This document shows, piece after piece, positions 1-35,120 of a DNA stretch of 64,000 nucleotides. The notes under the pieces are model-generated. The model was not told the DNA's origin and made no database searches. It was given only the letters and a program-made list of their open reading frames with translations. Within the stretch, counting starts at the first letter, position 1. Every line of letters starts with the position of its first letter. The DNA comes from Piromyces finnis finn (lineage: Eukaryota > Fungi > Neocallimastigomycota). Location of the stretch: NCBI GenBank assembly GCA_002104945.1, contig MCFH01000009.1, positions 682,001 to 746,000 of the forward strand, written 5' to 3'. The translations under genes and the position numbers were made by a program.

Positions 1-1
1 T

Positions 2-97
2 GATTTAAAAGAAAAATATAAAAATATAGAAAATGAATTAAATGCCTTAAAAAGAAAATATGAAATTCAAGATCAAAATAGACAAATTTTTTATTAA
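2..97 (+). CDS. 3' end of a coiled-coil-rich ORF running in from beyond the window
   Basis: Frame from 2 reads DLKEKYKNIENELNALKRKYEIQDQNRQIFY* (TAA at 95-97), with heptad-like spacing. The 5' part is not visible. Confidence 0.45.
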   Translation, partial: DLKEKYKNIENELNALKRKYEIQDQNRQIFY

Positions 98-402
98 AAA
101 AAAGTTTTTTATTTTTAACAAAAATTTATTGACTTTACGATATTAAAGATATTTATTTTTTTTTTAAAAAAAAAAAATAAAAATAAAGAGTGTTGATATT
201 TTTTTAATACAGTAATATAGTAAAAAAAATGTGATATAATGATATAATGATAATATAATGATTATAATAGGTTTAGTGCTATAATCATTAAAATAACAAA
301 GGATAAAAATAAAGAATAATAAAAATATATATATATAAAAGATACCTAACAATCGTTTGATATAAATATGAAAATTAATTAAGACAAGAAAATAAAAAGT
401 TT

Positions 403-584
403 AAATGAATAAAAAAAATTAGAAAATAATTAATGAGTACAAATAAAATATGACGAGTTAAAATGATTAAACTAAATTAAAATCAATTATAATAAATGAA
501 TAAAAAAAATTAGAAAATAATTAATGAGTACAAATAAAATATGACGAGTTAAAATGATTAAACTAAATTAAAATCAATTATAAT
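403..584. repeat. Exact tandem duplication of a 91-bp unit (2 copies)
   Basis: aaatgaataaaaaaaattagaaaataattaatgagtacaaataaaatatgacgagttaaaatg...caattataat starts at 403 and again at 494; the internal marker atgagtac is at 433 and 524. Confidence 0.9.
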
Positions 585-1136
585 AAAGTATTCTCAACAA
601 AAACAAAAGATGTCTATAACTTTAAAGAAACGAAACAAAATGTTTAATTCATCTACAGAAATAGAAAATTTTGAAAACCGAAATATTTCAATTGATATAT
701 CAACACTTCAATTATTATTTAAAAAGATATTTCGTAGTAAGAATAAAGATATATATTACTAAAAGATTTGTTTATTATTATATTTTTATTTTTATTTTTT
801 TTTTATTATTTTATTTTTGCAATTTTTATAAAATATATTTACATAAAATAATAATTATGTATTTTTTTTATATAAATATTTTAATTACATTTATATTATT
901 ATCAATTTGTATAATTAATATAAATCTGTAATTTTCATTCTATTTGAACTTTTTATTTATGCTTTATTACATAAATATAAATTTGAAATAATAATTTAAT
1001 TATATTCTATATTTTTGTTAAAAAAAAAAAAGCTTTTCTTAAAAAATTTTCAATTTTTTATAAAATTTCCTTCGTTTTTATTAAATTTTTTAAAACGTTT
1101 TTCTATAAGTATATATAAATATATGGATATTTATTT

Positions 1137-3509
1137 TTATTGACAAATACCATACTTAGCTTGGCAATTATTTGTACAGTGTGCATCAGAAGTACCACAG
1201 TAACCATATTGAGAACAACAACCAGATCTACATCTACCGTGACCTTCACCACACATACCATCAGTACTATATATCTTAGTGTAATCAACTGTTGATCCAG
1301 TGTTTCCAGTGTTTCCAGTGTTAGTAGAAGTAGAACCACATTTACCGAAACCAGATTGACAACCAGTACCACAATGGGCATCAGTTATTCCACAATAACC
1401 ATATTTTGAACAGCACTGGCCAGATGGACAACTGCCCTTGTTTGGACCACAGGTACCATCTGTAGATACTGGAAGTGTGGTTTTGGTTGAAGTAGTAGTT
1501 GTGGTCTTTTTAACTGTAGTGGTGGTTTTTCTAGTAGTGGTTTTAACAGTAGTAGTGGTTTTAACAGCAGTAGTTTTAACAGTAGTGGTTTTAGCAATAG
1601 TACTACCTGGGCAGTAACCAAATTCGGCTTGACAATTAGTACAGTATTCAGTTTCAGAACCACAGTAACCATATTTAGAACAGCATTGCTTATCTGGGCA
1701 TCTACCATAATCTGGTCCACATAATCCATTACGAGAAATATCTGAACCGTATGTTTCACTACCTAAATCAATGTTTAAGCCAAATTCTTTATTCATAGCC
1801 TTAGCACGTCTGTAAACCCATTCCTTTATACCATAACCAGCACCATGTCTAGAAGCAGTATTAATATTAGTTTCAAAGTCTTCCATAGTCCAATTTAATT
1901 GTGTGCCTGAACCTTTACGAAGTGGGTTTTTGTTGATAACTTCATAATTCCAAGCAATTTCATCACGGTGACGTTCAACTAAAGCGTCAATTCTTTTATT
2001 AAGAACTTTAGGGTTGAAGATTTTAACAACAATATTTTTAAGAATAGTTTCAAAACGTGCTCTGAGAGTTGCATTAGATAATAATTTATCAATAGCATAA
2101 CGTTGTGGAGCATCATATTCATCAAGACCCCATTCAATGTTAACAAAATCTTTGTAAGAACGATCAATAAAATCATCATAACGCATGTATGGCATACCAA
2201 GATTTAAACCAAAAGTACCATCCCAATCTTGACAAATGAAATAGTATTTATTGTTTTCTGTTGGATTATCATATACAGCAAAGTTTGTTGAGTATAACCA
2301 ATATGAATCCCAATGACCAGTGAGGATTTCCATAGCTATTCCTTTAAAGAAAGTATCAATATCAAACCAATTTTGTTCAAAACTCTTAACTTGAGAAGAA
2401 CTGTTAACATTTAAACTTTCAAATTGCTTGCAAAGATTTTTAATATTTGAGTTGTCATAACGATCACTATTGTATGGTTGGAAAGCATAAAAAGTGTTTC
2501 CAGTGTAATAGAAATCAGCACCAGTACTACAATCAAGTGGATGACCTAACTTATTAACATCAGTGATTAATAATTTACCGTTGTTATCCCCATGGAAAGT
2601 AGCACGAGCAAATGATTCACTGGCTGCTTCTTCTTGTAAAATATAGTAACCAACAGCTTTTTCATTAACATAAACTCTAGTTTTAATAGATTGAATGGTA
2701 GGATAACCGAGAGCATTTAAAATGTCACCATAGAGATCTTGACGTAAGAAAGTTGGATCTTCATTATTATCACGGAATTTTAAAGTATAACGACCTTCAA
2801 CACCGTCACCACTTAATTGAACCTTAAATTGGAATTTATTCCAAGATTTATTTTTTGGATAAGCTGGTATATTTTTAAAGGTTAAAATTGAATCTTTTAA
2901 AATGAAAACGATTCTTTCTAAATAATCAGCACTAGCTTTAGTAGAAGTGAACATTTTGTTACTTCTATCACCATAAATATGAACAGTTGGGATATAAGAA
3001 TCATCGAATAATTCACCCTTACCAATAGACTTGGTCCATTGATAAACCTGTGGTAATTGTGGTAAAGTCTTGACTGTATCTTTTCTACCAAGGAATTCAT
3101 TGTGTGTAGTAGTAGCTCCTTTAGCTAAGGTACGAGTAAAACCTTCTGAAACATTATCAACATAATAAGTGTAACTATGTTTTAAATTTTTTTTATTATA
3201 ATTATAATATTTTTTTTAATAATTTATTAATTAATTTTTTCGTTTTTTTAATATAAAATGAAATAAAATACTAATTATTAAACTGTAATTATTTTTTGAA
3301 AATATTTATATTTACGTTAATTCAGAATCAGATACTGTAAGAGTAGCTTGGTAAACTGGAGCATATGTACTGTATCTTTTTAAGTTGTATGATTTTGAAC
3401 CAATTTTAACTGATACATTTTGAGCGTTTAAAGCTATAAGTGAAAATTTTACACTTCTAGCAGCTGCTAAAGCAATAAAAGCTAATATTAAAAATAAGTT
3501 TTTGTACAT
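1137..3509 (-). CDS. cotH: Secreted CotH-family protein kinase with three C-terminal CBM18 (hevein-like chitin-binding) domains, copy 1; about 743 aa
   Basis: Exons 3509-3316 and 3174-1137 (GT-AG intron, total 2232 nt, in frame). Signal peptide MYKNLFLILAFIALAAA; CotH motifs [44 protein letters not shown]; three CGxxxGxCxxxxCCSxYGYCG modules separated by a Thr/Lys-rich linker. Confidence 0.92.
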
Positions 3510-5521
3510 TTTTTAAATTTCTATTTTTAAATTTTTATTTTTTATGTTTTTTTTCATATGTTACTATTTAATACAACATATATATAAATATATTTTTTAT
3601 TATTATTATTTTGTTTTTTTATTTTATATTTATTTATTTTTTTTTTTTTTAATTTTTTCTTTTTTACTTTTATTATTTTGTATCTTTATATTTTTTGGTA
3701 TATAAAGGTACAAAATTATAAAGCAACAATTGAAATAAAAAACTAAAAAAAATTAAGGAAAAAAGGATAACTTTATATATTCATTTCAATTCATACATTA
3801 AATATATTAAATAATGAATAAAAACTTCAATCATAATTATTATACAATAAAGTTTAATATTAAAAAAGAAATTAATATAATAAATGAATATTGGGAATAT
3901 AGAATATATTATATTATAATATATAATTTTCATTTATTAAAATATATAAGGTTTTTAATTTTCATATTCATTTTAATATACAACTTTTTTAATTTTTTTT
4001 AAAAAATAGTATTACTATTATAATATGAAAAATAATAAAAAAAAATTCATTTGTTAATTAAATTATTAAAAAATTTTTAATTTATTTCTAATTATATTAA
4101 TAATATATAAACTTTCTTTTTGAAAGATTGAAAAATATAGTAACAATATTATAAATAATTAAAAAAGAGCATTTTAATATATAATATTCTTTTTTAATAA
4201 TAAGATGATTTTCATTATAATAATAAATATTTTATTATTATCATTAGAAGTATCTAATAAAATGATTAAAATTCAACTGAAACTACCATTTTCAAGTGAA
4301 TTTTTTTAATACTCTTTCGTTCATTTCAAAAATTAAGGGTCATTGGCTATGTTCGTTTAACATTTCATTTCAATATCACAATAAATTTAAATTATTATAA
4401 AATTTATTTCAATATATTTTGTTATATTTTAATATATTGTTTAATATATTTCACAGTACTATTTATTTATTGTATTTAAATTAATTTAATAATATTGGTG
4501 TAAATTAAAATAGGCGCTGATAATATTTCCATATTGTTCAATAATATTGTTCTCTTTAATAACAATAAAATGTATCATGTTTAATATTAATTTTTATTCA
4601 ATGCTTTATATAAAAATATATGATTTTATTATATTATAATATATTTAGTTTAATATTAAATTCATATAGGAATCCATGAATGCCAATGATATTTTCAAGT
4701 TAAATATGTAGTACAAATCATTTATTAAATATAAAACCAAGTTTTAATTTTTAGGAAGAAAATTATACAATAAAATTAAATTAAATATATAAAATTTTAA
4801 TTATTATTAAAATTTAATTTTTTAATGAAATAATTAATTACATAGAAATATAATGAAAATATAATATAATAAAATTAATTATTATTTTTATATAAATATT
4901 TATAATGAAAATATAAAGTTAATAATAAACTTTAATTATAATTATTTAAAGAATCACTTAAAAAATTAATTTTTGAGGAAGGAGAAAAAAAGTAAAGATA
5001 TAAATAATAGTTCTCATAAACTTTATAATTCTACATGAAAAATATAAAATATATAATGGAATACTTATTACTTATTTTCTTTGTAATAACTTTTTATTTC
5101 TATAATCATATATTAATAAATTATCTTTTATAACAAACAAACAAAAACAATAATCCAAAAATTGTATTATTTTACTTATTTATTTCTTTATAGCTTTTTT
5201 TTTTTTTTTTTTTTTGAAATTATTTCTTTATAGCTTTTTGTTTTTTGGTTGTATTAATTTTATTTGTGTTCAGGGTACAAGGATTATTGTGTTCATATAA
5301 TATATTAAAGTAAAAACTGCTCTTTGAACACAAAAAAAAAAGACATCTTAATAATTTAACAATAATTAATTTATTATAAATTAAGTTTAAAAATTGGCCT
5401 AATTTTTAGATACAAAAATAAGCTCAAACTTTATTTTAAAAATATTAATATAAAAATATATCATTAGATTTGTTGTCTTTACAAAACATTATATATTTAG
5501 CTCTTTACTTTTCTTTTTTTT

Positions 5522-5552
<31 letters not shown>

Positions 5553-5855
5553 GAGCAATAAATTTTAAAAACTATAAAATAATTAATATATTAATAAATA
5601 AATTAATAGAATTAATTATATAATATATAAAAATAATTTTAAGTTTTATTTTAAAGATATTTATTTACAGTAATTAAAATACAATGAATTAAAATGAATT
5701 AATTATTATGTTTTATATATGAATATTATAAAAAAAAAAAATACTTAATTATATATTGTATATATAGTATAGAACTATTTTAAAATTGTATGCATATATG
5801 ATATATATATTAAAGAAAATTATAAAATCATTTTAATTCCAACTTTCTTTTCTTT

Positions 5856-8271
5856 CTACCAACAATGACCATAAGTAGATTGGCACCCAGTACCACAATA
5901 TGCAGATGAGGTACCACAATAACCATACTTTGAACAGCATAAATTACCTGGGCATATACCTTTTTCAGAACCACATGTGTAATCAGTAGAGATACTTAAA
6001 TATGAACGTGATGAAGAATCAGTAGTACATTTACCATACTCGGATTGACATCCAGAACCACAGTAAGCAGATGATGTACCACAGTAACCATACTTAGAAC
6101 AACATTGACCGTTTGGACATGCACCTTTACCAGAACCACAACTTCCATCATATGTTGAGTCAGTAGAACTTGAGTTTTCTGTAGTAATAGTTTCAGTTGT
6201 TGTACTACTATTAGATAATGAACAATAACCCCAAGCGGATTGACATCCAGAACCGCAATAGGAAGATGTAGATCCACAGTAACCATATTCAGAACAGCAT
6301 TCATCACTTGGACATCTACCATGACCTTCACCACATCTTCCATCGATAGATAATGATTCAAAAGCTTCACTATCGGATCCTAAATCAATATTCAAATTAA
6401 ATTCCTTATTCATAGCTTTAGCACGTTTATATACCCATTCCTTTATACCATAACTGGCACCATGTCTTGAACGAGTATTAATATTAGTGTCAAAATCTTT
6501 AATAGTCCAACCTAATTGTGAACCTGTAGCCTTTCGAAGTGGATAATTATTAATAGTATCATAATTCCAAGCAATTTCTTCACGATGACGGGCAACTAAT
6601 GCATCTAATCTTTTACCTATTTCAACTGGATTGAAAATATTAATTACAATATCCTTAAGAATTGTTTCAAAACGTGCTCTAAGAGTCTCATTAGATAATA
6701 ATTTATCAACAGCTATACGATGTGGAGCATCATATTCATCAAGTCCCCATTCAAGATTGACAAAGTCTTTGTATGAACGGTCAATAAAATCTTTATAACG
6801 CATGTATGGCATACCAAGATTTAAACCAAAAGTACCATCCCAATCTTGATCAATAAAGTAAAATTTGTTATTTTCAGTTGGATCATCGTAAAGAGCGTAA
6901 TTAGTAGAATATAACCAATAAGAATCCCAGTGACCAGTAAGAATTTCCATGGCAATAGCCTTGAAAAATGTATCAATATCAAACCAATTTTTTTCAAAAT
7001 CTTTAATTTCAGATAAATTGTTGACATTTAGTTTTTCAAAAGCTTTACTAAGTTCTTTAACTCTTGAGTTGTCATAACGATAACTATTATATGGTTGGAA
7101 AGCATAGAAATCATTACCATTATAATGAAAATCAGCACCAGTACTACAATCAAGAGGATGACCTAATTTATTAACATCAGTAATTAATAATTTACCGTTG
7201 TTATCCCCATGGAAAGTAGCACGAACAAATGATTCACTGGCTGCTTCTTCTTGTAAAATATAGTAACCAACAGCTTTTTCATTAACATAAACTCTAGTTT
7301 TAACAGATTGAATAGTAGGATAACCAAGAGCATTTAAAATATCACCATAGAGATCTTGACGCATAAATGTTGGATCTTCATTATTATCACGGAATTTTAA
7401 AATATACCTTCCTTCAATTCCATTATTATTTAATCTGACTTTAAATTGCATTTTATCCCAATATTTGTTTTTTGGATCACATTGAACATTCTATAATTAT
7501 TAATTAATATATATATAGGTTATTAATTTTTAAAATTCTTTTTTTTTTTTTTTTTCTAGTAAATATATAAATAATTACTTCAAAAGTGTAAATATTATCT
7601 TTTAAGATAAAAACAATTTTTTCTAATTTATCAGGATTTGCTTCAGTAGTAGTGAAAATGGTTTCACTTCTATCACCATAAATATGTACAGTTGGAATAT
7701 ATGAATCATCAAATAATTCACCTTTACCAATAGATTTAGACCAATTATAAACTTGTTTAAATTGAGGAATTTCTTTTATTGTATATTTTCTACCAAAGAA
7801 TTCATTATGAGTTTTATCAACATTTTCTTCTAATACACGACTAAAGTTTTCAGAAATACCATCAACAACATATTTGTATCTAGCAATTTGAATATTAAAG
7901 TAGATAATTATGAAGAAATGAATAAAAATTAATATTTATTGCATCTATGTCACAAATTATATAATTTTTTAAAAAAAATAGATTTTTTTTTTTGAATTTT
8001 TCAATAATTTTATTATTATTAACCACTTTAAAATTAAATATTAAAATTTTATTAATTGGCTATAAATAAAAACGTACGAAACATTGGTATCATCAATAGA
8101 AATAACTGATTGATATACTGGGGCATAAGAACTATATTTCTCTAAAGTGTAATATTTTTCATTTATCTTTACACTGACAGATGAACCGAAAGCAACCACC
8201 GAAAATTTAACGTTTCTGGAAGCTACTATGGTAATTAGTAGAGAAAATATTGATAAAAAGTTTTTAATCAT
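5856..8271 (-). CDS. cotH: Secreted CotH-family kinase with three CBM18 domains, copy 2 (tandem paralog); about 709 aa
   Basis: Exons 8271-8078, 7879-7579 and 7490-5856 (2130 nt, in frame, GT-AG). Signal peptide [18 protein letters not shown]; same kinase motifs ([21 protein letters not shown]); three CCSxYGYCG chitin-binding modules. Confidence 0.92.
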
Positions 8272-8602
8272 ATTTTGATTTAATAATCGATTATTTTTAA
8301 TATATTTTTAAATTTTTATATTTAATAATAATAAAATAAAACAAAACAAAATCAAAAAAAAAAAAAAAAAAAAAAGAAATAATCTAGTTCTTTTATATTT
8401 ATTATTAATAAGAAAAAATATTTTAAAAAATATAATTATTAATTATAGTTTATTATATAAAAAAATAAGTACGTATGATTAGAAAATATAGAAATATTAA
8501 GATAATTTTAATGTAAAACCGAAGTTACATTTTAAACTTTATAAAGATTTTTAAATTGATATAATTAATAAATAGTAAGATGTAATATAAAAAGGCGTCG
8601 AA

Positions 8603-8698
<96 letters not shown>
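8603..8698. repeat. (AAT)n microsatellite, about 32 units, intergenic
   Basis: Direct reading. Confidence 0.95.
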
Positions 8699-9498
8699 TA
8701 GTATAATAGTAGATTTGAAAATTAAATTACCTTCAAAAGCTTAATTTATCAATTTCTCTTAATTAATTTTTATATTAAGGGTTAAAGAAATCGCATTTCT
8801 AATTAATAATATTTATAATTTCCTTTTTATCTTTTAACTTCCTTTGTATTTTTAATTTCCTTTTGAACTTTTGATCTTTCCTTTTAATTTTTAATACCTT
8901 TAAGATTTTTTTTATTTTAATTTTAAATTATGAATATTTTTTATAAAAACAAAAATAAAAATAAAAAAAAAAAGGCATAACAAATTTTATTTTTTTTTTT
9001 TTTTTTAAAAAAAAGGAAAAAGGTTTATATAGATTATTATTAAAATATTAAACTACAACATAATAAACTTAATAGGATATATATTGAAATATAAATTCTT
9101 TTTGATAATAGATAAAGTTTTCAGTATATTTTAAATTTATTTATTAATGTATAATAAAATAATACTATAAAAAAAAATAATAAAAAAAAAGAAAGAAGAG
9201 AAAAAAATTAATATATATATAAATATATTTAATGCATAAAGAATAGGAATGTCTTGATATATATTCATTGATTTTTATTCTATCAGCTCAACAAATTAAA
9301 AATAAGAAAAATAATTGAAATAAAAATAAATATTTAAACTATATACCCTTATATTTTATTATTAATAAAATTTAATGAAGAAATAAATATATTCTATTTT
9401 TTATTTTAATAATTTATTATATGATATAAAAAATATTCAATAGGGATATTATATTCATTTATTTATTTACTAATATAAATGTAGAGTTATTTGGTTTT

Positions 9499-11020
9499 CT
9501 AATTTCTTTGTAAAGTTGATTCTAATAATTCTCTTAAACTGTCAGTACGCTCTATAGCACTACTCATACAATCCTGTATTAATTCTGAAGAAAGTGGAAT
9601 ACCACCAAGTTTTGATATACCACATAACTTATGTTCTTCATTATATATGAAAGTAATTGAAGTACTTGAAAGATTTTCTTCTTCTTCATTTGGATCAGCT
9701 AAAACATATTTACTAAATAAATATTTTTATATTAAATTTAAATATATATATATATACATAAAGAAATTTAGTATATAAAGGTCTTTCAATCTTTTAATAT
9801 TTAATTAATTTAAAAACATACTCATCAAATACGACATATGTAGCAGATAATGGGATTGATAATAATTCTAAAGATATTGTCTTCTCTTTGGAAGCCTCAG
9901 CTTTTCCTTCTTCTTCAATAAAAGTGACTTCTGGAAGTTTTACTTTTTAAATTTATTATATTTTAAAAAAATTTTTTTATAAATATTTATTAATTTTTGT
10001 TAATTATATTACATTGCTCATTGGCCTTGTATGAAAAAAAAAAAAAAAAAATACATAATAATACATACAACTTTTTAAAGCGGATATTATTGAGTATAAA
10101 GCAGCATCGAATATATTACCATCATAAGATAAACAAATAACATCTATATATAATACCCATACAGCATTTTTTTCAGATATACAGAGCTTATCTAAATCAA
10201 TAATTTTACATCTAATTTTTAAAGTTTATATATGCAATATGTATAAAATGTGGAAATTTAAAGATTTATATTTTAATTTATGTACTGTTATACATTCGAA
10301 ATTTTAATATTATTAAAAAAATTTAATTATATTAAAATATTACTGTTTAAATAATTTATCAATTCTTTCACTAATAGATTGAGCTAATTCTCCTGGTGGT
10401 CCTGGTTTAAAAATTGAAGAGCATATAGGTGATAATTCAACATTTGGTACTTTTAAATTTTAATAAAAATATAATTTATTTTGAAATTTGATTGTAATTC
10501 AATTTTGATTTCGAAATTTTGGGATTGTATAAAAATTAAATTATTGAAATATAAAATAATAATAATAAAATGAATGAATAAAATAAAAAATAATTAAATA
10601 TTAATAAAATTATTTATTTTCTATTCTACAATAAATATAAATGAGTAAATAAAATATAATCTATATATGTAATAGTAATATAAACTGTATATTTTTTATA
10701 TATTTTACCAATGTATCCTTTTCTTGGATCATCAACTCTTGGTTCGGCAACTTCTGCTTTAATACCACAAACGACTGAGGTTTTACCCATTTTTAGTACA
10801 CATGAACCTTCAGCACTTTTTAATGAATCTATTTAAAATCATACAGAATAATACATTTTATTTTATTTATAATGGTAATAGTATATATTTTTTTAAAAAA
10901 ATAATAAAATAAAATATAATAAATTATATTTTATAACACAATTAATTTTTTAATAGATAGCAATTTAAATTTTAATTATATATTAACAATCTTTGTTTTG
11001 TAACAATGATAACATTGACA

Positions 11021-12826: not shown

Positions 12827-15800
12827 TTAATTACTGTTTAATAAAGTAGTTTGCATTAATGTACGATAACGAGCTAATTCTTCTTTTGCAGATTCACATG
12901 AAGCACGTTCTGCGCTTAATTCAGATCTAAGTTTTGTCAGCTCCTTTTGTAATTTGGTATTTTCTTCAAATAATAATTTTGCGAATTCTTGAGTTTTATT
13001 ATAATCTTTTTGCTTTTCTTCCTTATCTTCAAGATAATTAATAATTTTATTAAATAATTTGTTAATAATTTCATCTTTTTCTTTTTGTATATATATATTT
13101 TGAGTAGTCCTTTCATCTTCATTCTTTTTAATTTGTGTAGTATTTGTTATTATTGCCTCATCATTTATTTCAGTTTTATCTTCATTATTTAGAGATTCTA
13201 CATCATCAGTATAATCATTAATTACTTCAATAGAAGTATCAATTTGTTCTTCATTATATGATTTATTAATAACTTCAGTAATAATTTCCATTTCCATATC
13301 ATCACTTACATTATCTTCAATAGATTTATAGTATTGATAATATTCACTATTTATTACATTTAATGAAGTTTCTTTCTTATCCCAACCATTGTAAATATAT
13401 TTAGCAATTGGATTAGTATCTCTCCATGGATAATCACCTTCTTGTACAATAAACATATATTTAGCAATTGGATTAGTATCTCTTTCTGGATAAACCCAAT
13501 TAACAACTTCTGTTTCTATTCCTCTACTAATCATTTCTCTCTTTGGCATTTGAGGAACATTAAATGGATATCTAGCATAGTAGAAAAAGTTTCTAGCTAA
13601 GAAATCATCTGGAACATAATCCGGAGCATTAGCACGTCTCTTCTTGAATGCTTCATTTGAAACATATATAGTTTCAACAAAAGCATGATTGAACATATAC
13701 TTTGCAATTGGATTTCTTCTATCAACTGGTCTGAATAATACTCTCTTCTTTCTCATTAAGAAAGCATCACTAATGTACCATTGAGTACCAACACTAACCA
13801 TTTTTGGTTTTGTAGAAACCTTCATTTGTTGTGGCTGCTCATGAATTTGCATCATTGGTGGTCGTATTGGCGTATTCCAATTGTCATCTTCGGTTGAAAC
13901 AGATTCCGGTGTTCTAGCAATATTGGATATAGTATGTGCTAATTTCATACTATTACTTTTGCCTATACTATTTTTGGCATATGTTCCATGTGGAGGTGGA
14001 ACTGGTACAGTTGGGCCATTAGCTCTATTAATATTACTTTTACTTGTTGATCTTTTTGATACTGGAAGTGAAGTGTTATTACTAATTGGAACTTTATTTT
14101 CATTTAATGGTTTCTTTTGATAAACCATAGGTTGAACTGGAACATGCATCATTTTTGAATTGTTATTATTATAGGTATTGTTTTTATAGTTCATACCATT
14201 GTTTAAATTATTATTATTAAAATTATTTTCAATATCTTCATTATTGTTATTGTTGCTATTATTGTTTGTTGAGTTTTTGTTTTCAACGTTTTCAAATGGA
14301 GAATATTGAATTTTAATCGGAATATATTTTGTTTGAGAAGTGTTATTTGTCAATTTTACTGGAGCTGTTGAATTATTATTCACATTGTGAACATTCTTTC
14401 CCTTTCCTAAAACATCTTCAGGACTTGAATTCTTTAAAAATTCCCAAAGGGTTTCCTGTTTTCTCTTTGGCTTACCTTCATTGAGAAGACGATCAATAGA
14501 ATCATCTGAATCATATTCATCAATCATATTCATGTTTTTATATTTATTTTCTCTATTTCTACCTAATGTATTATTAATAACATTCATTGGAACTAGATTT
14601 TCACGTTCATGACTCTTTGGCTTTAAACGGTTAGATGATTGTTGATGTTTTTGAATTTCATTCATACGATTTGGAGTTAAACTAATTTTTCTAGTTTGAT
14701 CTGAAGAAATCATAGAATCAAAATCAAAACTATTATCATTATTAGCATCGCCATAATTTGAAATAGCTCCACTTGATGGCTTAAATACTAATGCATTATC
14801 ATTAATTTCTTGATATGAAAGAGGTGGTACATCTGGCTGCTTAACAGAACTAGTATAACTGGCATTTCCTCTTGATGAAGATGAAGCATTTCTATGATGA
14901 CTTTTTTTTGACTTTCTTGAATTTCTACTGACTGCGCGTTTTAAAGATTTTGAAAGGCTTCGAGAATGATTTTTTTTTTCCTTTTCAGATCCATTAGTGG
15001 TAAATGAACCTTCATAATTATCATTTTGAGTAAAACTATATTCGGTGATACTATCATTTATAAAATCAAATGAATCATCTTCATAAGTTGATGGAACATT
15101 ATGAATAGACTTTGATCTTGGTTTATTAGTAATATAAGCAGAAGAAGCTGATCCAGAGATTGGATACTCTTTTACACTTCTAGATGCTTTTGGTGGTTCA
15201 TTATAAACAGCATCAGGTTTACTTAAATCAACTGCAGAAAAACTTTGTTGTGATCCCTTATAAAATTTTTGATTATTGACATTAATTGGAAGAGGAGATA
15301 GTGGTGGAGAATTACTATAACTTGAATTATAATTTACACTATTTAAGGATTTACTTGAATTATTAATAGTATTAAGATTTTCTTTCTTAATTGCATTAAT
15401 AATATTATAGTAATTTGATGTTTCGGTTTGTTCGTTGGAAGTTTGTTGTTTATATTGACTTTCAACGGGTGCACTTACCGGAGAATTAAGGTGATAATTA
15501 TTTGAAGCCATACCATACTTATTATAACCCTTTTGGGAATTTTGTGAAAATATATTAGCAGACATTGGATAATTTTGACTTTCTTTTGAATAATTTACAT
15601 CAATTAATGATGGTTTATTTCCACTTTGGTATTGATATTGTGTTTGTGGTTTTTGTACTGGACTTTGAGATGAAGTGCTAGAATTAAGCTGTGGAGATGA
15701 TTCTATTGTTAAAAGATAAATAATTATTAATTATTAGAATTAATTTTCATTTTTCAAATATTTCTTTTTTTAATTGTTTTTTTTTCTCCTAATATTACAA

Positions 15801-19096: not shown

Positions 19097-21969
19097 ATGA
19101 GTACTAATATAATAATTTGTATTATTGTCTTTTGTAGTATGACTTTTTCAAAATTAATTAACAAATCTTATTCCTTAAATATAACTTTTAATGAATCCCA
19201 AAAATTTAATAAAAAATATATTATTGTATTCAAAAGTATTATAGAAAATAATGATATTAATTCTGTAAGTGAAAGAGGAAATATGAATAATAAGAGACAG
19301 GAGAATCATAGGAGAAAAAGAGCAATTATTAAAAATTATTTAAAATCAAAATATAATTTATTAACTCTTCAATATAATATAAATTATCACAATGATATTA
19401 AAACTAATCTTCATGAATATGTAGAATATCCTATTTTCGAAAACATCGTCCAACCTGCCAATAATAAGTCTATGTCAAATCCAATATTGTACAAATCTTT
19501 TATGTTTTTGAATGAGCAAGATATAATGAAAAAAGTTTATGAAAGTACAAAGGATCAGAATATCATGAAAAGATCAAAAGAAGATTATCAATATATTATT
19601 AACAAGTTTATGAATGCTATTAATTCCACTGAATTTCCAATAGATTATATAGAAGAAGATTTTTCTGTTAATAGCGACGATTTATCAGAAGAGAATTATA
19701 AAAACCTTTTACGACTTAAAAATAAAAAACATAAAAAAAGGTCAATAACTTTAAATATCATCAATAAAGCATTTAAAAAAAGAAGATCTATATCTAATGA
19801 TAATATTGAAATTCAAGATGATAATTTAGAATGGGTAATAATAAATATTTAAAATATAAAATATATATATAAAGTTGTTAAGTAAAATATATGTATTAAA
19901 ATATTTCTATTAAAATATTGTATTATAATATACAAATAGGGCTTAGATAGGATTGATCAAAGACAAACTACTGGAGATAATATTTACAAGTATCAAAAAA
20001 ATGCTGGTAGAAACGTCAACGTTTATATAATTGATACGTAATAAATATAAATAATATATATCTTGTTAATATAAATATTTTAATTATTTTTTATATTGAA
20101 AAATATTCGACTTTATAGTGGATTAAATTTTAATCATAAAGATTATAAATCAAGATGTTATCATGGTGCAAACTTTGTAGATAATGAAAGCGATGATGAT
20201 CTATATGGTATTATTAATTTTTTTTTCAATTTTCTTTATTTTATTTTTATACCTTTTATTTATTACTATTTTTTAATGATTTAATATTTAAATCAAATTA
20301 TCGTTATACTTATTACATATTCACTTAATGTTTCTTTTTAATTTCAAAAAATAAATATTTTTATTATTTATCAACAAAAAGTTATTTAAATTAGATATTT
20401 TTCATAGATTCAAAAATTTAATTTTAATATTTTTTGTAACTTTATTAGGTCATGGTTCATATGTTGCAGGGATCGTTGGAGGTTAGAGAAGTATTTTTTT
20501 TTTACTCCTTAACCATATTTTAATAAATTTTTATCATAAAAAACATTAGGAGAAATCCATGGAGTAGCAAAAAAAGTAAACTTAATTTCTGTAAAAGTTC
20601 TAAATAAAAATGGGAGGTTGATTTTAAAATAAAATAAATATATAAACTGAAATATTTATCATCAAAATAATAAATGTTATAAATATTTAAAATATATATT
20701 AGTGGAAAATCAAGTACTGTTATACAAGGTCTGTATTGGGTTATTAATAATCATAAAAATAATAGAGAAAATAATATAGGTTCAATTGCAAAGTAAAATC
20801 AAATAAATATTAAGTAGAAAGAAATAAATTATAATATTAATAAATTAAAATAAATTTTTTACTTATTAAATAATATCAATAATTTAAAATATATATACAG
20901 TATATCATTAGGATCAATTAAAAGTAATGCATTGAATGATGCTGTTTCAATAGCCAAAAAAAATGGAATATTGGTTATTACTTCTGGTACTACTTTAGTG
21001 TTATTAAATTTTATTTTTTAAATATATTTATATCTATTATAATAATCATAAAAATTTATGATTTTATCTTTTATTCTATCATTACTATTAGCTGGAAATG
21101 ATGGAGGTGATGCTTGTAATAAATCACCAGCATCATCAAAGGACGGTAGAATCAAATATATTATTTTATATTACTTTTCAAAATAAATATTGAATTTTTT
21201 TTAATAGTTATTAGTGTTGGAGCTATTGACAAAGATGATCATATTAGTCTTTTTTCTAATAGAGGCTCTTGCGTTTCTATGTAATAAAAATATTTTATAT
21301 AGATTATCAGAAAAATAAAATCTTATTATTTTTATATTGACAAAATTTTAATATTTTTTACCTTTAATATATAAGTTATGCTCCAGGAGAAGATATTTCT
21401 AGTTCATCGAATATTTCATCCAATTCTGGAATAAAATATGGCACTTCCTTTTCAACACCATTTGTATCTGGAGTAAAAATAGAATTATTTTCATATAATT
21501 ATATAAAAACTATTATATTTTTATACTATATATAATTAATAATTAGTATTTTAAAATGATAATTTTATAGGTAGCTGCCTTGATGATGTCTGAATTATAT
21601 AATTACCAACAAAATTTTTCTCCTGATAGAATTAAGAATATTCTGCTTAATATTGCTACCAATAGCTTGACAAATGGTGATTCGATTACTCAATCCAACA
21701 ATGCTATGATTTACGAATATAATTTCGAAAATGGAAACAGAAAAGACTCACAAGATAATAAGCAAACTAGTAGAATAGATGTTTTTTCTCAATCAAATCC
21801 AAATAATATTTATATCCTGTATAATGGTTGGAATTATGGTTTTACCATTAATAATACTATTTCTTCAATTACAAATTTTACAATGAAATCTCTTTCATTG
21901 AAAGAATTTTTTCAAAATTTTATAATTATTTATTGTATTTTATTATTGTCTTATATTTTATTTTTATAA
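19097..21969 (+). CDS. Subtilisin/proteinase K-like serine protease (S8A) with long propeptide and hydrophobic C-terminal tail; 11 exons
   Basis: Exon 1 is 19097-19834, then small exons: WGLDRIDQR, VNVYIIDTG (Asp), GHGSYVAGIVGG (His), HGVAKKVNLISVKVL, SAGNDGGDACNKSPAS, FSNRGSCVSIYAPG, GTSFSTPFVSG (Ser). N-terminal hydrophobic signal; ends FFQNFIIIYCILLLSYILFL*. Confidence 0.9.
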
Positions 21970-28523: not shown

Positions 28524-30679
28524 TTATGACATCGATTCCTTTAAAACATAATCATCTATTTCTTTAAATAATTTCATTTGTTCGTCCTTAGCTTTTTTTA
28601 TTTCTTCTAAATCATCAGAGTCCTTTTAAGATAAAAACATAAATAAGCATTATTAATTTACATCAAAATTAAAATAACATTAATATTATTATATAAACTT
28701 ACCAATTTTTCCATATCTTCAATTTTTATCTTCTTTCTATTTCTCTTTTTTTTCTTTGATTCTAATATTTGTTGATGCTCTTGAAGAAGGATTTCATTAA
28801 CATTATCAAGATAGTGTGATTCCTTTTTACTAGTATAAGAGCCAGAAATAGAAATTGGAGTGTGAGTTCCTTCATTTTTTATATATTTTTGCTTTGATTT
28901 ATAAATTTTTTCAGCTTTTGAAAATCCAAATGGGTCATCAGATGATGAATCTTGATTAAAATAAATTTTTTCTGGTTGATCGTAATTTAATTCTTCAATT
29001 ACTGTAGTTTTGATTTCTTTAGGATGAGATATGAATGAGTCTGTTCTGTAAATATTGGGAATATTAGTTACATAAGCGGTACCATCATTGCTTCTAATTT
29101 TTCGCTTTCTATTTAATTCATCTGGTGAAAGAGGCTTATATCTTAAATTATTCTTATTATCATCATCCATTACTAAATTGAAATTATCGTTACCTGATAA
29201 AAGCTTTTTAATCTTCTCATCCAATTCATCTGCACTGTAAAGTGATTTATCATCAGAATTAAATACATCACCTTCATCAAGAAATTCATCTGGCTGGAAA
29301 TCAAAATGACTGATATCAGAATCAGTACGAATTAAATGACTATTAGATATAGGAGATATATTAATAAAATTTGATAATGAATTACTGTCTTGAAATGAGG
29401 TATTTCGAGATATAGTACTGACCTCTTTTTCTGGCGATTTAAAACTACTGCTTTCTAATGGAGTATGAAAACTCATTTCTTCATTTAATATTCTGGTATA
29501 ATTAATAGGGGATTCTTCTAAGAAAAGAAGGGTATTATTAAAATTATTAGGAGTAGAGGATTTATAACTATTATTACAATTAAGTGACTCTAGAATATCT
29601 GATATTTGAACTTTTCCACCTTTATTAAATTCGGCTAATAACTCTAACGACTTATTACTTAAATCACATGATTTTCTTTTTAAATTATGGTCATCATCAA
29701 TTATACTATTATCAATTGTTGATTTCGATGAATTAAAATCATTTTCAGAATCACTTCTTATAAACGGTACAATAAGATCGTTGTTATGTTTTTTTAATGG
29801 TGATGAATCATCAATTTTAATGATTTCAATTTTATCGGGACTTCTGCTTGTTTTTTTTTCTAATGAAGTGTTATAAGATATATTTATTGAATCATTAATA
29901 TTTTTTACTTTGTCATCAAAAGTAACCTTCTCTTTACGTTTTGAACTGGTATTATCTTTTTTCTTTAAAATAGATGGTTTACATAATATATTTTTCTGAT
30001 CATTCTTTTCAATCTTTTTTGGCTCTAAATTTTCATCTTTAAAATCTGGAACAATGTCCTCGTCAATTCCTATATTTTCCTTTATTTCTATTTTAACTTT
30101 TTTACTTTTTAATTTATTGTCATTATTAACGGTATCATTATGAATATTTTCTTTTGATATTTTATTTTGTATTAATACAATAAAATTTGGATCATTTATT
30201 AATTTATCTTTTTGATTTTTGATTTTTATACTAGATTTAGTTTTGGCATTTTTATTTATATCAAGATTTATATTTTTATTATTAATAATTGTTGTTATTT
30301 TTGTTTTGTTATTTCCTTTTTCTTTTAGAGTATCACGATTAACATTACTATTTGAAGTAGCAGTATTATTATCTTTTAATACATTTGTTTTAATTGGCTT
30401 TTCATTTATAGTTTTGATTATATTATGATTTTTTACTAATTTTTCTTTTAAGCCCCTTCTATTTACCAAATTTTCGCTTTTTTGCTTTAATAATATTAAG
30501 TTTTCTTTAGGCTTGCTTCTGCTTCTTAAAGAATATCCTATGCTTTTTGGAATAATATTTTCCTTATTCGTTTGTATTTTAGGTTTAGTTGAACGCTTTC
30601 TTTTTAAGCCATTTAAATTATTTTCTTTATTTATATTTTCATTATTCGCTAATAATCTCTGTTTACTTCTTGTTAACAT
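28524..30679 (-). CDS. Candidate sororin-family cohesin regulator (about 691 aa)
   Basis: Exon 1 30679-28703 (GTAAGT donor) plus exon 2 28622-28524, in frame. Several KEN boxes, a DPFGF motif, polybasic KKKKRNRKK and C-terminus DEQMKLFKEIDDYVLKESMS*. Confidence 0.65.
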
Positions 30680-33210: not shown

Positions 33211-35120
33211 TTAGAAAGATGTTGCACTACGATCATTATAATAGTAAGATACATAATTTTGATTTTGATGTGGATAGTAACCATTATTTCTTGAATTTTT
33301 ATAATTATTACCATTACCATTACCATGACGATTATTGTATTGACTATTTTGATAATTTCTTCTGCCACGGCCTCCCTTATAATAGCCTCTCTTCTTTTGA
33401 TAATGATTATTTTTATTATTTTGGTAACTTGTATTTTGAGATTGTTCAGATAATTTCTTTTCCTCTGTTACTGAAGTTTCTGTTTCTTCAGTCATTAATT
33501 CAGTTTCTGTTTCTACTATATCATTTGTATTATTTATTTCTTCATTTTCAATTACTGAAATTTCCTTAGAAAAACTTTCATCATTTAGTTCCTTGCTATT
33601 TTCAATCTTGATTTCGTTTTCAGAAATCTCATATTTGTCTTTTTCATTTTCTTCATCTTTCATTATTATTTTAAATAAAAAAATTATCTTAACAACTTTT
33701 ATCTTTATATATTATATTTTATTATTTCATTTCAGTATATAAATTACTTACCAATTACTTCATTTGGTTGCATAAAATTAATTTTTGGCATAGCAACGGT
33801 AATATCATTTACTATATCATTTTGTTTTTCCTCATAAGTGTTAGAGGAAAAGTCAATTTGTTGTTGTGGTTGAAATTGTTCATTATATTCAATAATAGAA
33901 TCATTGCTAAAGAAAGAAATGTTTTGATGACTGACATTCTTGCTTACTTGTGGTGGATTTAATATTAAATTAATTATACTATTAACATCTTTAAATGTAA
34001 CATTTTCACAACATTCATCTGTAGATGCTTCATATAATTTTTCAAGAACTAATTCACCTTCAGATTTTTCTTCATTTTTACTGATCATTATAATATATTA
34101 TGTAAATTAAGTAATCAAAGAACTAATTAGTCTAATCTCTTTATATATTTTTCCAATTTACCATAAAAATAACATAATTTTATTTTTTTTGTATTAACAT
34201 TTATACATACTTCATCATTTCGTTAGTTCCTAACAAAATGTTACGGACATAATTTAAAGCATTTAATTCAGCGTTTGAAAATGTAAATTTTCTGGTATTG
34301 ATTTCAATATTTAAAGCATAAGAAGCTTTAAATAAATATTGTAATTGAGAAGAATGCATTTTCTTTAATTAATAAAAAAAATATAATTATTATAATATTA
34401 ATTTCAATATAACATTTAGTTATTGTGAAAGACAAAAAAGAATATAATTTATTTTTATTATTAATGATCATTTTAAATTTAACATCATAATACCTTTTCA
34501 AGTTCAACCTTCTTATTAACTTCGTCAAGAAGTCTTTCATCTTGTATTTTTTTATTAACTTCTTGTTCCCTTTTTTCCTGTTTTCATAATTTATGAAAGA
34601 TAAATAAGAAAAGTTATTGATAAATTATATAATTACAATATAATCATTTATATGTTTATACTTGTTCATCAAAAATAGTATATTGTTTATGAAGGTCTTC
34701 AAATTCTTTTAACAAAAGAGAAACCTCTGGCTTCTTTTTGATAGCTGATATTTGATCAGTATTGAGTTCCTCATCATTACAATTTTCATACTTTTCAATT
34801 TTATTCTATTTCATTAATATCATTGTTAATATAAAAAGAAAGAAATCAAAAATCAATATTATGAATAATTATTATATAGTATTGATTTTTTACATAATAA
34901 AGTCTATTAATTTGCTTACCATACGTTTACGTAAAGTTCTAAGTTTTTTATTAACAATATTAATATATTTGTTAACTTTTTCTTCAGAATTTGTGTCACT
35001 TATAGCACATGATTCAACTTCCGCTTCTTCGTTAACAATTTTAGCTAACCTTTTCTTTTCTTTTTTAGATAATTTATTTTCAGCTACGCGGATTGAATCG
35101 TTTAAACGTGAAGAAAGCAT
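33211..35120 (-). CDS. Caprin-1-like coiled-coil/RG-rich RNA-binding protein (multi-exon)
   Basis: Spliced NKKLRTLRKRMNKIEKYE...ELNTDQISAIKKKPEVSLLLKEFEDL resembles the Caprin HR1 region. It is followed by an acidic linker and a C-terminal RGYYKGGRGRRNY / Asn-Tyr-rich tail. Confidence 0.65.

What the first reader, a model, noticed from the sequence alone, without database searches (positions are those of the whole stretch)
1137..8271. Tandem pair of secreted, dockerin-free CotH kinases each tethered to three chitin-binding CBM18 modules
Both genes encode signal peptide + N-terminal beta-rich domain + CotH kinase + 3xCBM18. The catalytic-type motifs are intact (K in LKFR, D..N in [10 protein letters not shown], DxD in QDWD). 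CotH proteins are atypical extracellular kinases. In anaerobic fungi they are mostly known fused to fungal dockerins as cellulosome parts, but no dockerin motif (CWS..LGYPCC type) is visible here. The architecture suggests a kinase targeted to the fungus's own chitin wall (cyst, sporangium or rhizoid) that phosphorylates wall proteins or shields chitin. That would be a eukaryotic analogue of Bacillus spore-coat phosphorylation. Whether this exact architecture has been characterised, I cannot tell.
Basis: partly seen in the sequence, partly recalled or inferred. Interest (0 to 1): 0.75.

Follow-up and report, generated by a model that had tools for sequence, protein, structure and literature searches.

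The report
Chitin-tethered CotH kinase gene pair
Two neighbouring genes of the gut fungus Piromyces finnis encode secreted kinase-like CotH proteins that end in three chitin-binding modules instead of a cellulosome dockerin; the pair is old, conserved and uncharacterised, probably works at the fungal wall, and gives a handle on why anaerobic fungi keep over a hundred CotH genes.

Summary
Window 1137-8271 (minus strand) holds two intact genes of Piromyces finnis. They match, exon by exon, the deposited proteins BCR36DRAFT_347197 (743 aa) and BCR36DRAFT_410326 (709 aa).

Each protein has:
- a signal-peptide-like start;
- a ~75-residue CBM20-like beta-sandwich;
- a CotH kinase core (Z 32.7 to Bacillus cereus CotH) with the family-wide Lys, the catalytic Asp/Asn and the DxD intact;
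- three 8-Cys CBM18 modules that keep the Ser/Tyr/Tyr binding residues;
- no dockerin.

K178 is.

The genes belong to one well-supported clade carrying 1-8 CBM18 modules, found in Piromyces, Anaeromyces, Neocallimastix and Orpinomyces. This genome has five copies. The tandem pair keeps its order and intron pattern in Anaeromyces robustus, and the CotH core has dN/dS 0.21.

Sister clades end in GPI-like tails, and the nearest outside match is Mucoromycota CotH. So this is a surface or wall branch, separate from cellulosomal CotH.

The wall-tethered kinase reading is plausible but untested. I found no paper describing the fusion. The scan noted an 8xCBM18 copy elsewhere in this genome (s1-171805).

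The parts
1137..3509 (-). Gene 1 (P0001, BCR36DRAFT_347197, 743 aa): exon 1 3509..3316, intron 3315..3175, exon 2 3174..1137 including the stop codon
   Evidence: Read from the sequence. tblastn of P0001 on the window. Splice sites GTAAAT..ACATAG.
3081..3452 (-). Gene 1 N-terminal CBM20-like beta-sandwich (residues 20-96, interrupted by the intron)
   Evidence: Full model pLDDT 95. Z 9.1 to glucoamylase CBM20. Domain folded alone: Z 8.5, rmsd 1.8 over 73 residues to STBD1 CBM20. No Pfam family.
1776..2999 (-). Gene 1 CotH kinase core (residues 124-531; Pfam match 175-522 = 2846..1803). Codons: K178 2837..2835, D354 2309..2307, N362 2285..2283, D381 2228..2226, D383 2222..2220
   Evidence: Pfam. 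5jda Z 32.7, rmsd 3.1, 339 residues aligned. Residue mapping.
1611..1721 (-). Gene 1 CBM18 module 1 (residues 550-586)
   Evidence: 8-Cys pattern and CCSKYGYCG. PF00187. Hevein and WGA hits.
1452..1610 (-). Gene 1 Thr/Lys-rich linker (residues 587-639; 57% Ser+Thr with regular Lys/Arg)
   Evidence: Across the clade, linkers are 36% T, 14% K and 12% S.
1338..1451 (-). Gene 1 CBM18 module 2 (residues 640-677)
1143..1253 (-). Gene 1 CBM18 module 3 (residues 706-742); the protein ends one residue later
5856..8271 (-). Gene 2 (P0006, BCR36DRAFT_410326, 709 aa): exons 8271..8078, 7879..7579 and 7490..5856; introns 8077..7880 and 7578..7491
   Evidence: Read from the sequence. tblastn gives 100% on the large exon and 95-98% on the alignments that overrun the two small exons. 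Splice sites.
7786..8211 (-). Gene 2 N-terminal beta-sandwich (residues ~21-96, interrupted by intron 1)
   Evidence: Homology to gene 1 and alignment A4.
6414..7463 (-). Gene 2 CotH Pfam match (residues 175-524). Codons: K178 7454..7452, D354 6926..6924, N362 6902..6900, D381 6845..6843, D383 6839..6837
6222..6335 (-). Gene 2 CBM18 module 1 (residues 551-588)
6027..6140 (-). Gene 2 CBM18 module 2 (residues 616-653)
5862..5975 (-). Gene 2 CBM18 module 3 (residues 671-708)

Best explanation
The two genes encode secreted CotH-family kinases that are held on chitin by a C-terminal array of three hevein-type CBM18 modules joined by Thr/Ser-rich linkers. The chitin is most likely that of the fungus's own wall.

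Shown here:
- The genes are intact and under purifying selection.
- They belong to a monophyletic CBM18-bearing clade conserved across anaerobic-fungal genera.
- The tandem pair itself is conserved in Anaeromyces.
- The kinase core has the CotH fold, with the family-wide Lys, the catalytic Asp/Asn and the metal-binding DxD in place.
- The CBM18 modules keep their disulfide pattern and the Ser plus aromatic sugar-binding residues.
- No dockerin, transmembrane segment or GPI-like tail is present.

Inferred:
- The proteins are exported through the signal peptide.
- The CBM18 array binds wall chitin multivalently and places the kinase domain at the wall surface.
- There the kinase uses ATP with Mn/Mg to phosphorylate Ser/Thr of wall or secreted proteins, possibly including its own or neighbours' Thr/Lys-rich linkers. 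This would change wall assembly or surface properties, as Bacillus CotH does for CotB and CotG.

In this family the anchor appears to decide the working place: dockerin for the cellulosome, a GPI-like tail for membrane or wall, and CBM18 for chitin.
For: - Gene models and identity to deposited proteins.
- Domains.
- Fold: model pLDDT 95.4. Foldseek E 1e-16 to 5jd9. Z 32.7 over 339 residues to 5jda.
- Catalytic residues: B. cereus D224/N229/D247/D249 were read off the 5jd9 alignment of a bacterial bridge. Their spacing of 23 matches B. subtilis D228 and D251, whose mutants are inactive (PMC7821199). They align to D354/N362/D381/D383.
- Conservation of those residues: D354, N362 and D383 in 50 of 50, D381 in 49 of 50 and K178 in 48 of 50 CotH sequences, bacteria included. 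All are invariant in 72 relatives.
- CBM18: six 8-Cys modules with CCSxYGYCG. Across 179 clade modules, of the 170 that matched the core motif, all 170 have Ser and 136 and 165 have Tyr at the two aromatic sites. Hevein, WGA and pokeweed lectin hits.
- Clade: 54 rows with SH-aLRT 100, and the two genes fall in different subclades.
- Synteny with the same order and intron pattern in a JGI contig and in Anaeromyces robustus.
- dN/dS 0.21 for the CotH core.
- Five clade members in this genome, with 2-8 modules.
- Surface setting: sister clade with hydrophobic GPI-like tails. Mucoromycota CotH is the best structural match over residues 13-512 (features). Mucor CotH4 loss alters spore-wall chitin (PMC9973265).
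- Expression of a close relative: P0005 (81% identical, in gene 1's subclade) sits as one uninterrupted 2229-nt frame on 16 contigs of 2.6 kb, which implies spliced transcripts.
- Runs X1-X4 hold 0.44-0.49 of the sampled words of 2700-8400, about the exonic share.
Against: - There is no direct evidence of kinase activity, chitin binding, location or substrate.
- Expression of these two genes themselves is not shown.
- The catalytic loop has three more residues between Asp and Asn than Bacillus CotH.
- The ATP-binding mode could not be inspected.
- Mucorales CotH proteins, the nearest outside relatives, are known as ligands (invasins) and no kinase activity of theirs was found in the papers read.
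- CBM18 proteins can also bind foreign chitin or shield chitin without any enzyme.
- In two of gene 1's three modules the third aromatic site is His instead of Tyr.
Confidence: 0.42

Rival explanations
1. The protein is a non-enzymatic surface protein. The CBM18 array anchors it to the wall, and the CotH domain with its N-terminal beta-sandwich acts as a ligand-binding or structural surface module, as in Mucorales CotH invasins. It could mediate adhesion to plant particles, bacteria or methanogens, or shield chitin from rumen chitinases. Under this reading the conserved 'catalytic' residues serve nucleotide binding or fold stability only.
For: - The nearest outside relatives by fold and features are Mucoromycota CotH, which are known as host-cell ligands (PMC9973265; PMC10079182).
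- CBM18-only proteins are strongly induced in Caecomyces co-culture with a methanogen, and the authors suggest a role in physical association or wall remodelling (PMC8665504).
- The N-terminal domain has a carbohydrate-binding-module fold.
Against: - Complete conservation of Lys/Asp/Asn/DxD across 72 relatives and 50 diverse CotH sequences is what an active enzyme predicts.
- dN/dS of the core is 0.21.
- B. subtilis CotH with changes at the same Asp residues loses function.
Confidence: 0.25
2. The protein is a glycan- or glycoprotein-directed kinase. Flanked by carbohydrate-binding-type modules on both sides, the CotH domain would phosphorylate a wall sugar (a chitin or chitosan end, or an O-linked glycan) rather than a protein side chain, as the secretory-pathway kinases FAM20B and POMK do in animals (established knowledge, not tested here).
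For: - The architecture is a CBM20-like fold, then the kinase, then 3xCBM18.
- Fam20C appears among distant structural neighbours at Z about 9.
- Earlier scan notes report CotH domains fused to GT2 polysaccharide synthases in this genome (not tested here).
Against: - No CotH is known to act on sugars. Bacillus CotH is a Ser/Thr protein kinase.
- The N-terminal domain has no Trp, gives no Pfam CBM hit, and is shared with GPI-type and Mucoromycota CotH, so it is not specific to the chitin-bound form.
Confidence: 0.1
3. The protein targets foreign chitin. It would be released into the medium and bind chitin of other rumen fungi, of ingested material or of protozoan prey remains, acting in competition or nutrient capture rather than on the producer's wall.
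For: - There is no covalent anchor, transmembrane segment or GPI-like tail, so the protein is free to diffuse.
- CBM18 occurs in lectins and chitinases that act on foreign chitin (one search hits; PMC8665504).
Against: - No chitinase or other hydrolase domain is present.
- Sister clades are cell-anchored.
- The producer's own wall is the nearest and most abundant chitin at secretion.
Confidence: 0.1
4. The genes are decaying duplicates or annotation artefacts without function.
For: The CotH family is very large in this genome (at least 124 matches, some with internal stops).
Against: - Both frames are intact with canonical splice sites.
- dN/dS is 0.21.
- Orthologous pairs are kept in Anaeromyces and in a metagenome contig.
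- A close relative occurs on transcript-like intronless contigs.
Confidence: 0.02

Closest known systems
Bacillus CotH spore-coat kinase (B. cereus 5JD9/5JDA; B. subtilis CotH)
   Same: - Same kinase fold (Z 32.7, rmsd 3.1 over 339 residues).
- Same catalytic Asp, Asn and DxD, and the same conserved Lys.
- It acts outside the cytoplasm on a protective surface layer.
- Its substrates CotB and CotG are Ser plus Lys/Arg-rich repeats, which recalls the Thr/Lys-rich linkers here.
   Different: - Only 17% identity; a sequence search of the PDB does not connect them.
- The Bacillus protein has no signal peptide, no N-terminal beta-sandwich and no CBM.
- It is placed by coat assembly, not by a carbohydrate anchor.
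- The catalytic loop here is three residues longer.
Mucoromycota CotH proteins (Rhizopus and Mucor CotH1-CotH17, including the CotH2/3 invasins)
   Same: - Same overall layout of signal peptide, N-terminal beta-sandwich and CotH core (Atlas TM 0.80 over residues 13-512; feature score 0.97).
- They are surface proteins.
- Mucor CotH3/4 affect wall structure and spore-wall chitin.
   Different: - Mucorales forms end in a Ser/Thr-rich region, and some carry a GPI signal. Here the end is 3xCBM18.
- The invasin motif MGQTNDGAYRDPTDNN is only 7/16 identical at the homologous place, which lies between the catalytic Asn and the DxD.
Cellulosomal dockerin-bearing CotH of anaerobic fungi (Haitjema 2017 as cited in PMC8665504; Lillington 2023, Protein Expr Purif 210:106323, not held)
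   Same: Same phylum, same Pfam family, secreted, and the catalytic D/N/D is conserved.
   Different: - It is a different, distant clade within the genome. The dockerin-type frames sampled were taken from the best-scoring Pfam CotH matches, while the two window genes score far lower.
- It carries two C-terminal CBM10 dockerins that dock to scaffoldin. The window genes have none.
CBM18-only lectin-like proteins of chytrids and anaerobic fungi (Batrachochytrium CBM18 expansion; Caecomyces CBM18 proteins induced in methanogen co-culture)
   Same: Tandem hevein modules with Ser/Thr-rich linkers on secreted proteins; a proposed role at the fungal wall.
   Different: - Those are counted as having no catalytic domain because CAZy annotation does not see CotH.
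- Here a kinase-fold domain of about 400 residues precedes the modules.
- Whether some of the published 'CBM18-only' genes are CotH fusions could not be checked.

Membership tests
CotH kinase family (PF08757) | Profile match above the curated cut-off | tested here: met
   85.5 and 92.7 bits against a cut-off of 23.8; also found in the own-genome scan.
CotH kinase family (PF08757) | Atypical kinase fold of Bacillus CotH | tested here: met
   Model pLDDT 95.4. 5jd9 Foldseek E 1e-16. 5jda Z 32.7, 339 residues aligned.
CotH kinase family (PF08757) | Catalytic Asp (B. subtilis D228), the Asn that follows it, and the metal-binding Asp (B. subtilis D251) | tested here: met
   D354, N362 and D381/D383, mapped through a bacterial bridge sequence to 5jd9. 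Conserved in 49-50 of 50 sequences. Functional meaning of D228 and D251 from PMC7821199.
CotH kinase family (PF08757) | Conserved nucleotide-binding Lys | tested here: inconclusive
K178 is Lys in 48 of 50 sequences, bacteria included. Which Lys touches ATP could not be read from coordinates, and the structure paper is not held.
CotH kinase family (PF08757) | ATP-dependent phosphotransfer | not testable with these tools
   Needs a recombinant protein assay.
CBM18 / hevein domain (PF00187) | Profile match, three copies | tested here: met
   76 and 88.5 bits against a cut-off of 27.8, three stretches each. PDB hits to pokeweed lectin, WGA and hevein.
CBM18 / hevein domain (PF00187) | Eight-cysteine disulfide pattern | tested here: met
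   All six modules fit C..C..CC..C..C..C..C.
CBM18 / hevein domain (PF00187) | Ser plus aromatic residues of the GlcNAc-binding face (hevein S19, W21, W23, Y30) | tested here: met
   Ser-x-Tyr-Gly-Tyr in all six modules. The fourth site is Tyr in four and His in two. The clade-wide pattern is the same. Hevein numbering is from established knowledge.
CBM18 / hevein domain (PF00187) | Binding of chitin or chito-oligosaccharides | not testable with these tools
   Needs a pull-down or ITC.
Cellulosomal CotH (fungal dockerin, CBM10 PF02013) | One or more fungal dockerin modules | tested here: not met
   No PF02013 at E<=1. No GYxCC motif. The same motif scan finds dockerins in about 13 other CotH frames of this genome.
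Mucorales CotH invasins (CotH2/3, clade ZyGo-A) | Invasin motif MGQTNDGAYRDPTDNN | tested here: not met
   The homologous stretch is 7/16 identical (window sequence, against the motif as quoted in PMC10079182).
Mucorales CotH invasins (CotH2/3, clade ZyGo-A) | C-terminal GPI-anchor signal | tested here: not met
   The proteins end one residue after the last CBM18. There is no hydrophobic tail.
CBM20 starch-binding module (for the N-terminal domain) | Fold of the starch-binding beta-sandwich | tested here: inconclusive
   The top 20 rows are almost all alpha-glucan modules (CBM20, 41, 25, 26, 48). But Z is only 8.5 (rmsd 1.8, 73 residues) and Foldseek E is 2e-3, which is near the level of common arrangements.
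CBM20 starch-binding module (for the N-terminal domain) | Sequence family match and ligand-binding Trp residues | tested here: not met
   No Pfam hit at E<=1. Residues 20-96 contain no Trp (translation).

The most novel reading that the evidence does not exclude
The CBM18-tethered CotH proteins form a self-contained wall-modifying system. The kinase, fixed on chitin, would polyphosphorylate the Thr/Lys-rich linkers of itself, its tandem partner and other CBM18 proteins, as Bacillus CotH does with the Ser/Lys/Arg repeats of CotB and CotG. Alternatively it would phosphorylate wall glycans directly. Either way it would lay a charged phospho-layer over the chitin of the cyst or sporangium. That would be the first extracellular wall phosphorylation system in fungi, and it would explain part of the unexplained CotH expansion.
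Probability: 0.12. Interest if true: 0.8.

Novelty: new variant of a known kind. Interest (0 to 1): 0.45.

Why it matters
Anaerobic gut fungi hold more CotH genes than any other fungi. Two genomes contributed 348 of 846 copies in one survey, and its authors state that the reason is unclear (PMC10079182).

Work so far has looked at the dockerin-bearing, cellulosomal copies. This finding shows a separate, old branch whose members are sorted by their anchor: a GPI-like tail, no anchor, or a chitin-binding array. The chitin-bound form has been kept as a syntenic gene pair across genera.

That gives concrete, testable candidates for extracellular phosphorylation at a fungal wall. It links the family to the wall phenotypes of Mucor cotH mutants. 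It also warns that 'CBM18 proteins without catalytic domain' in CAZyme surveys may hide kinase-fold domains.

It is not a new kind of system. The genes are already deposited, though only as hypothetical proteins.

Tried and rejected
- **Read laying.** There is therefore no read-level evidence on expression or splicing. After that I sent no DNA of those places to any tool. Scripts used 1-3507 and 3558-10000, and protein P0001 was used from residue 2 or later.
- **PDB sequence searches.** Searches with the CotH part alone and with a 15-sequence profile did not reach Bacillus CotH. A bacterial bridge sequence and structure comparison were needed.
- **Papers not held.** Nguyen 2016, Lillington 2023, the MMBR review and the PNAS commentary. 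The identity of the ATP-binding Lys and the reported activity of cellulosomal CotH therefore rest on other sources or remain open.
- **The look-up of encoding contigs for P0006.** It found nothing.
- **Profile word search with A1.** It returned only Neocallimastigomycota and saturated at 8000 candidates. Whether CotH+CBM18 occurs outside the phylum was not tested. The large representative search was left unused.
- **Supplement of PMC8665504.** It lists CBM18 genes by CAZy modules only, so I could not tell whether they carry CotH.
- **Pfam on six other large frames of the window.** No hits.
- **Joined spliced models.** I did not build them myself. Searches used single exons by reference, or the deposited proteins P0001 and P0006, which match the exons.
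- **Rejected readings.** A cellulosome part is rejected because there is no dockerin. A recent local duplication is rejected because the tree and synteny show it is old. A pseudogene is rejected because of the conservation.

Full report
**What is there**

The region is very AT-rich: 10-18% G+C between genes and about 30-36% in exons. On the minus strand it holds two genes.

- Gene 1 runs 3509..1137 with one 141-nt GT..AG intron (3315..3175).
- Gene 2 runs 8271..5856 with introns 8077..7880 and 7578..7491.

A word search with the large exon found two deposited proteins on the same 1.2-Mb contig of Piromyces finnis:

- P0001 (BCR36DRAFT_347197, 743 aa), 100% identical to the queried part of gene 1;
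- P0006 (BCR36DRAFT_410326, 709 aa), 80% identical to it.

Both are named hypothetical or 'Chitin-binding type-1 domain-containing protein'. tblastn of both proteins on the window matches exon by exon. P0006 is 100% identical on the large exon of gene 2. The window is G000:C222:682001-746000.

Searches used exons by reference or these two deposited proteins.

**Domains**

Pfam gives CotH at residues 175-522 and 175-524 (85.5 and 92.7 bits, cut-off 23.8). It also gives three Chitin_bind_1 stretches per protein. No CBM_10 dockerin appears even at E<=1, and nothing is found for residues 1-190.

Each protein starts with a hydrophobic stretch followed by a small-residue site. It has no other hydrophobic segment. 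A signal peptide is therefore inferred, not predicted by a dedicated tool.

Each protein has three 8-Cys hevein modules with CCSxYGYCG, that is, the Ser and two aromatic residues of the GlcNAc-binding face. The fourth site is Tyr in four modules and His in two. The modules are joined by linkers of 17-53 residues that are 43-63% Ser+Thr. The long linker of gene 1 is a Thr/Lys repeat. PDB sequence hits are pokeweed lectin, wheat germ agglutinin and hevein.

**Structure**

An AlphaFold model of residues 20-545, built with 72 homologues, has pLDDT 95.4 and pTM 0.93.

- Model residues 105-512 match Bacillus cereus CotH kinase at Foldseek E 1e-16 and at Z 32.7, rmsd 3.1, 339 residues, 17% identity. 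More distant neighbours are HipA, CtkA, MavQ, PI3/PI4 kinases and Fam20C, at Z 9-12.
- Model residues 1-76 match starch-binding-type modules.
- Folded alone (pLDDT 83.6), this domain's best matches are STBD1 CBM20 (Z 8.5, rmsd 1.8, 73 residues), glucoamylase CBM20, GDE5 CBM20, and then CBM41, 26, 25 and 48. Foldseek E is 2e-3.

This is a consistent but only moderately strong fold assignment. There is no Pfam match and no Trp in the domain, so a ligand cannot be named.

**Catalytic residues**

Sequence searches of the PDB did not reach Bacillus CotH. A scan of bacterial genomes gave two bacterial CotH genes, L005 and L006. L005 aligns to 5jd9 at E 9e-23.

From that alignment, B. cereus has Asp224 in NFD, Asn229, and Asp247/Asp249 in WDYD. 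The Asp-to-Asp spacing of 23 equals that of B. subtilis D228 and D251, whose substitutions inactivate CotH (PMC7821199).

In the joint alignment these are D354, N362, D381 and D383 of both window proteins. All four are invariant in 72 relatives. Among 50 diverse CotH sequences (48 from this genome and 2 bacterial), D354, N362 and D383 are present in 50 and D381 in 49.

K178 is Lys in 48 of 50, bacteria included. The catalytic loop is three residues longer than in Bacillus.

**Family context**

The genome has at least 124 CotH matches. Twenty-five of them belong to the same branch as the window genes at E<=1e-40. Five of those are at least 58% identical.

After fetching those loci, a frame-by-frame scan showed the following.

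- All five carry CBM18 modules. The two window genes have 3 each. The others are at C160:70 kb (2 modules), C112:544 kb (4) and C112:592 kb (8, = P0046).
- Of the other genes in the branch, about 11 end in a hydrophobic GPI-like tail. About 6 end in a soluble NPPxKSC-type tail.
- Of 33 more distant CotH frames, about 13 carry dockerin motifs, mostly two each.

Dockerin-free CotH is therefore common in this genome.

Among database relatives, every protein at 52% identity or more that is complete carries 1-8 CBM18 modules. These come from Piromyces, Anaeromyces, Neocallimastix and Orpinomyces, and none has a dockerin.

A maximum-likelihood tree of the CotH parts, with the CBM18 tails cut off, gives three clades:

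- a CBM18 clade of 54 rows (SH-aLRT 100);
- a GPI-like clade of 20 rows (99);
- an anchor-less clade of 14 rows (99).

Gene 1 and gene 2 fall in different subclades. Gene 2 groups with Neocallimastix lanati and Anaeromyces robustus proteins.

**Age and selection**

The same tandem pair is present in a 35-kb JGI contig and in Anaeromyces robustus MCFG01000043.1. In both, the upstream gene has three exons (gene-2 type) and the downstream gene has two exons (gene-1 type), and both are on one strand.

The duplication therefore predates the split of these genera, and the pair has been kept together. Between the two window genes, dN/dS is 0.21 for the CotH core (dS 0.61) and 0.46 for the CBM18 tail.

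**Expression**

Indirect evidence:

- Four runs from three studies hold 0.44-0.49 of the sampled words of 2700-8400. That is close to the exonic share, but their RNA status is a guess.
- P0005 is 81% identical and lies in gene 1's subclade. It is encoded as one uninterrupted 2229-nt frame on 16 contigs of 2.6 kb from at least four JGI samples. That is what spliced transcripts look like.

**Relation to known things**

- The nearest match outside the phylum is a Mucoromycota CotH cluster. Atlas structure search gives TM 0.80 over model residues 13-512, which includes the N-terminal domain. Bacterial CotH clusters align only from about residue 90. Feature search agrees.
- Wang et al. 2023 describe three anaerobic-fungal CotH groups and say the expansion is unexplained.
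- Szebenyi et al. 2023 show that Mucor CotH3 and CotH4 shape wall structure and that CotH4 affects spore-wall chitin. Some Mucor CotH carry GPI signals.
- Brown et al. 2021 report CBM18 genes as the most induced CAZy class in Caecomyces-methanogen co-culture. They mention CotH only together with dockerins.
- Cellulosomal CotH kinases were expressed by Lillington et al. 2023. That paper is not held, so it is known here by title only.
- Three full-text searches found no paper that describes a CotH-CBM18 fusion.
- The scan itself had noted the 8xCBM18 copy on another piece (s1-171805). It had also noted CotH-GT2 fusions and other CotH clusters.

**Verdict**

The most likely mechanism is a secreted kinase fixed on wall chitin by a multivalent CBM18 array, one of three anchoring solutions in a surface-type CotH branch. 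The rivals are a non-enzymatic surface or adhesion role, a glycan-directed kinase, and action on foreign chitin.

This is a conserved, undescribed variant of a known family, already deposited as hypothetical proteins. Interest is moderate.

Noticed in passing
window 3081-3452 and 7786-8211 (minus strand): The N-terminal ~75 residues of both proteins fold as a CBM20/CBM48-type beta-sandwich (Z 8-9). There is no sequence-family match and no Trp. The domain is shared with GPI-type CotH of this genome and with Mucoromycota CotH. Its ligand is unknown.
   Followed up: partly
The tool describes this as a filter that also trips by chance.
   Followed up: no
window 7491-7578: Gene 2 has a second intron (88 nt) that gene 1 lacks at the homologous place. 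The same difference is seen in the Anaeromyces robustus and JGI orthologous pairs, so the intron gain or loss is as old as the duplication.
   Followed up: partly
window 1452-1610: The linker between CBM18 modules 1 and 2 of gene 1 is a Thr/Lys repeat (TTTxK-like). Linkers across the clade are 36% Thr and 14% Lys. This recalls the Ser/Lys/Arg repeats that Bacillus CotH phosphorylates, but it could simply be an O-glycosylated spacer.
   Followed up: partly
G000:C68:44361-49238 (locus L044): One open frame of 1752 aa contains three CotH kinase-domain matches in tandem. A neighbouring 1025-aa frame (C68:52703-55336) contains two. Multi-kinase CotH proteins were not examined further.
   Followed up: no
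G000:C172:270726-303342 (loci L041, L042): A dense array of at least nine CotH genes lies within 33 kb. The sampled members end in hydrophobic tails and have an extra N-terminal region.
   Followed up: no
window 12827-15565, 19097-19852, 28658-30679, 33211-33663, 41136-42578, 43106-45517: Six other long open frames in the window have no Pfam family at E<=0.001. One of them (28524-30679) was read by another agent as a candidate sororin.
   Followed up: no
L045:11641-19060 and L046: Downstream of the gene-1 orthologue in the JGI contigs lie a 260-aa frame without a family and a 603-aa carboxylesterase (COesterase) gene. The corresponding side of the window ends 1.1 kb after gene 1, so synteny beyond the pair could not be seen.
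   Followed up: no
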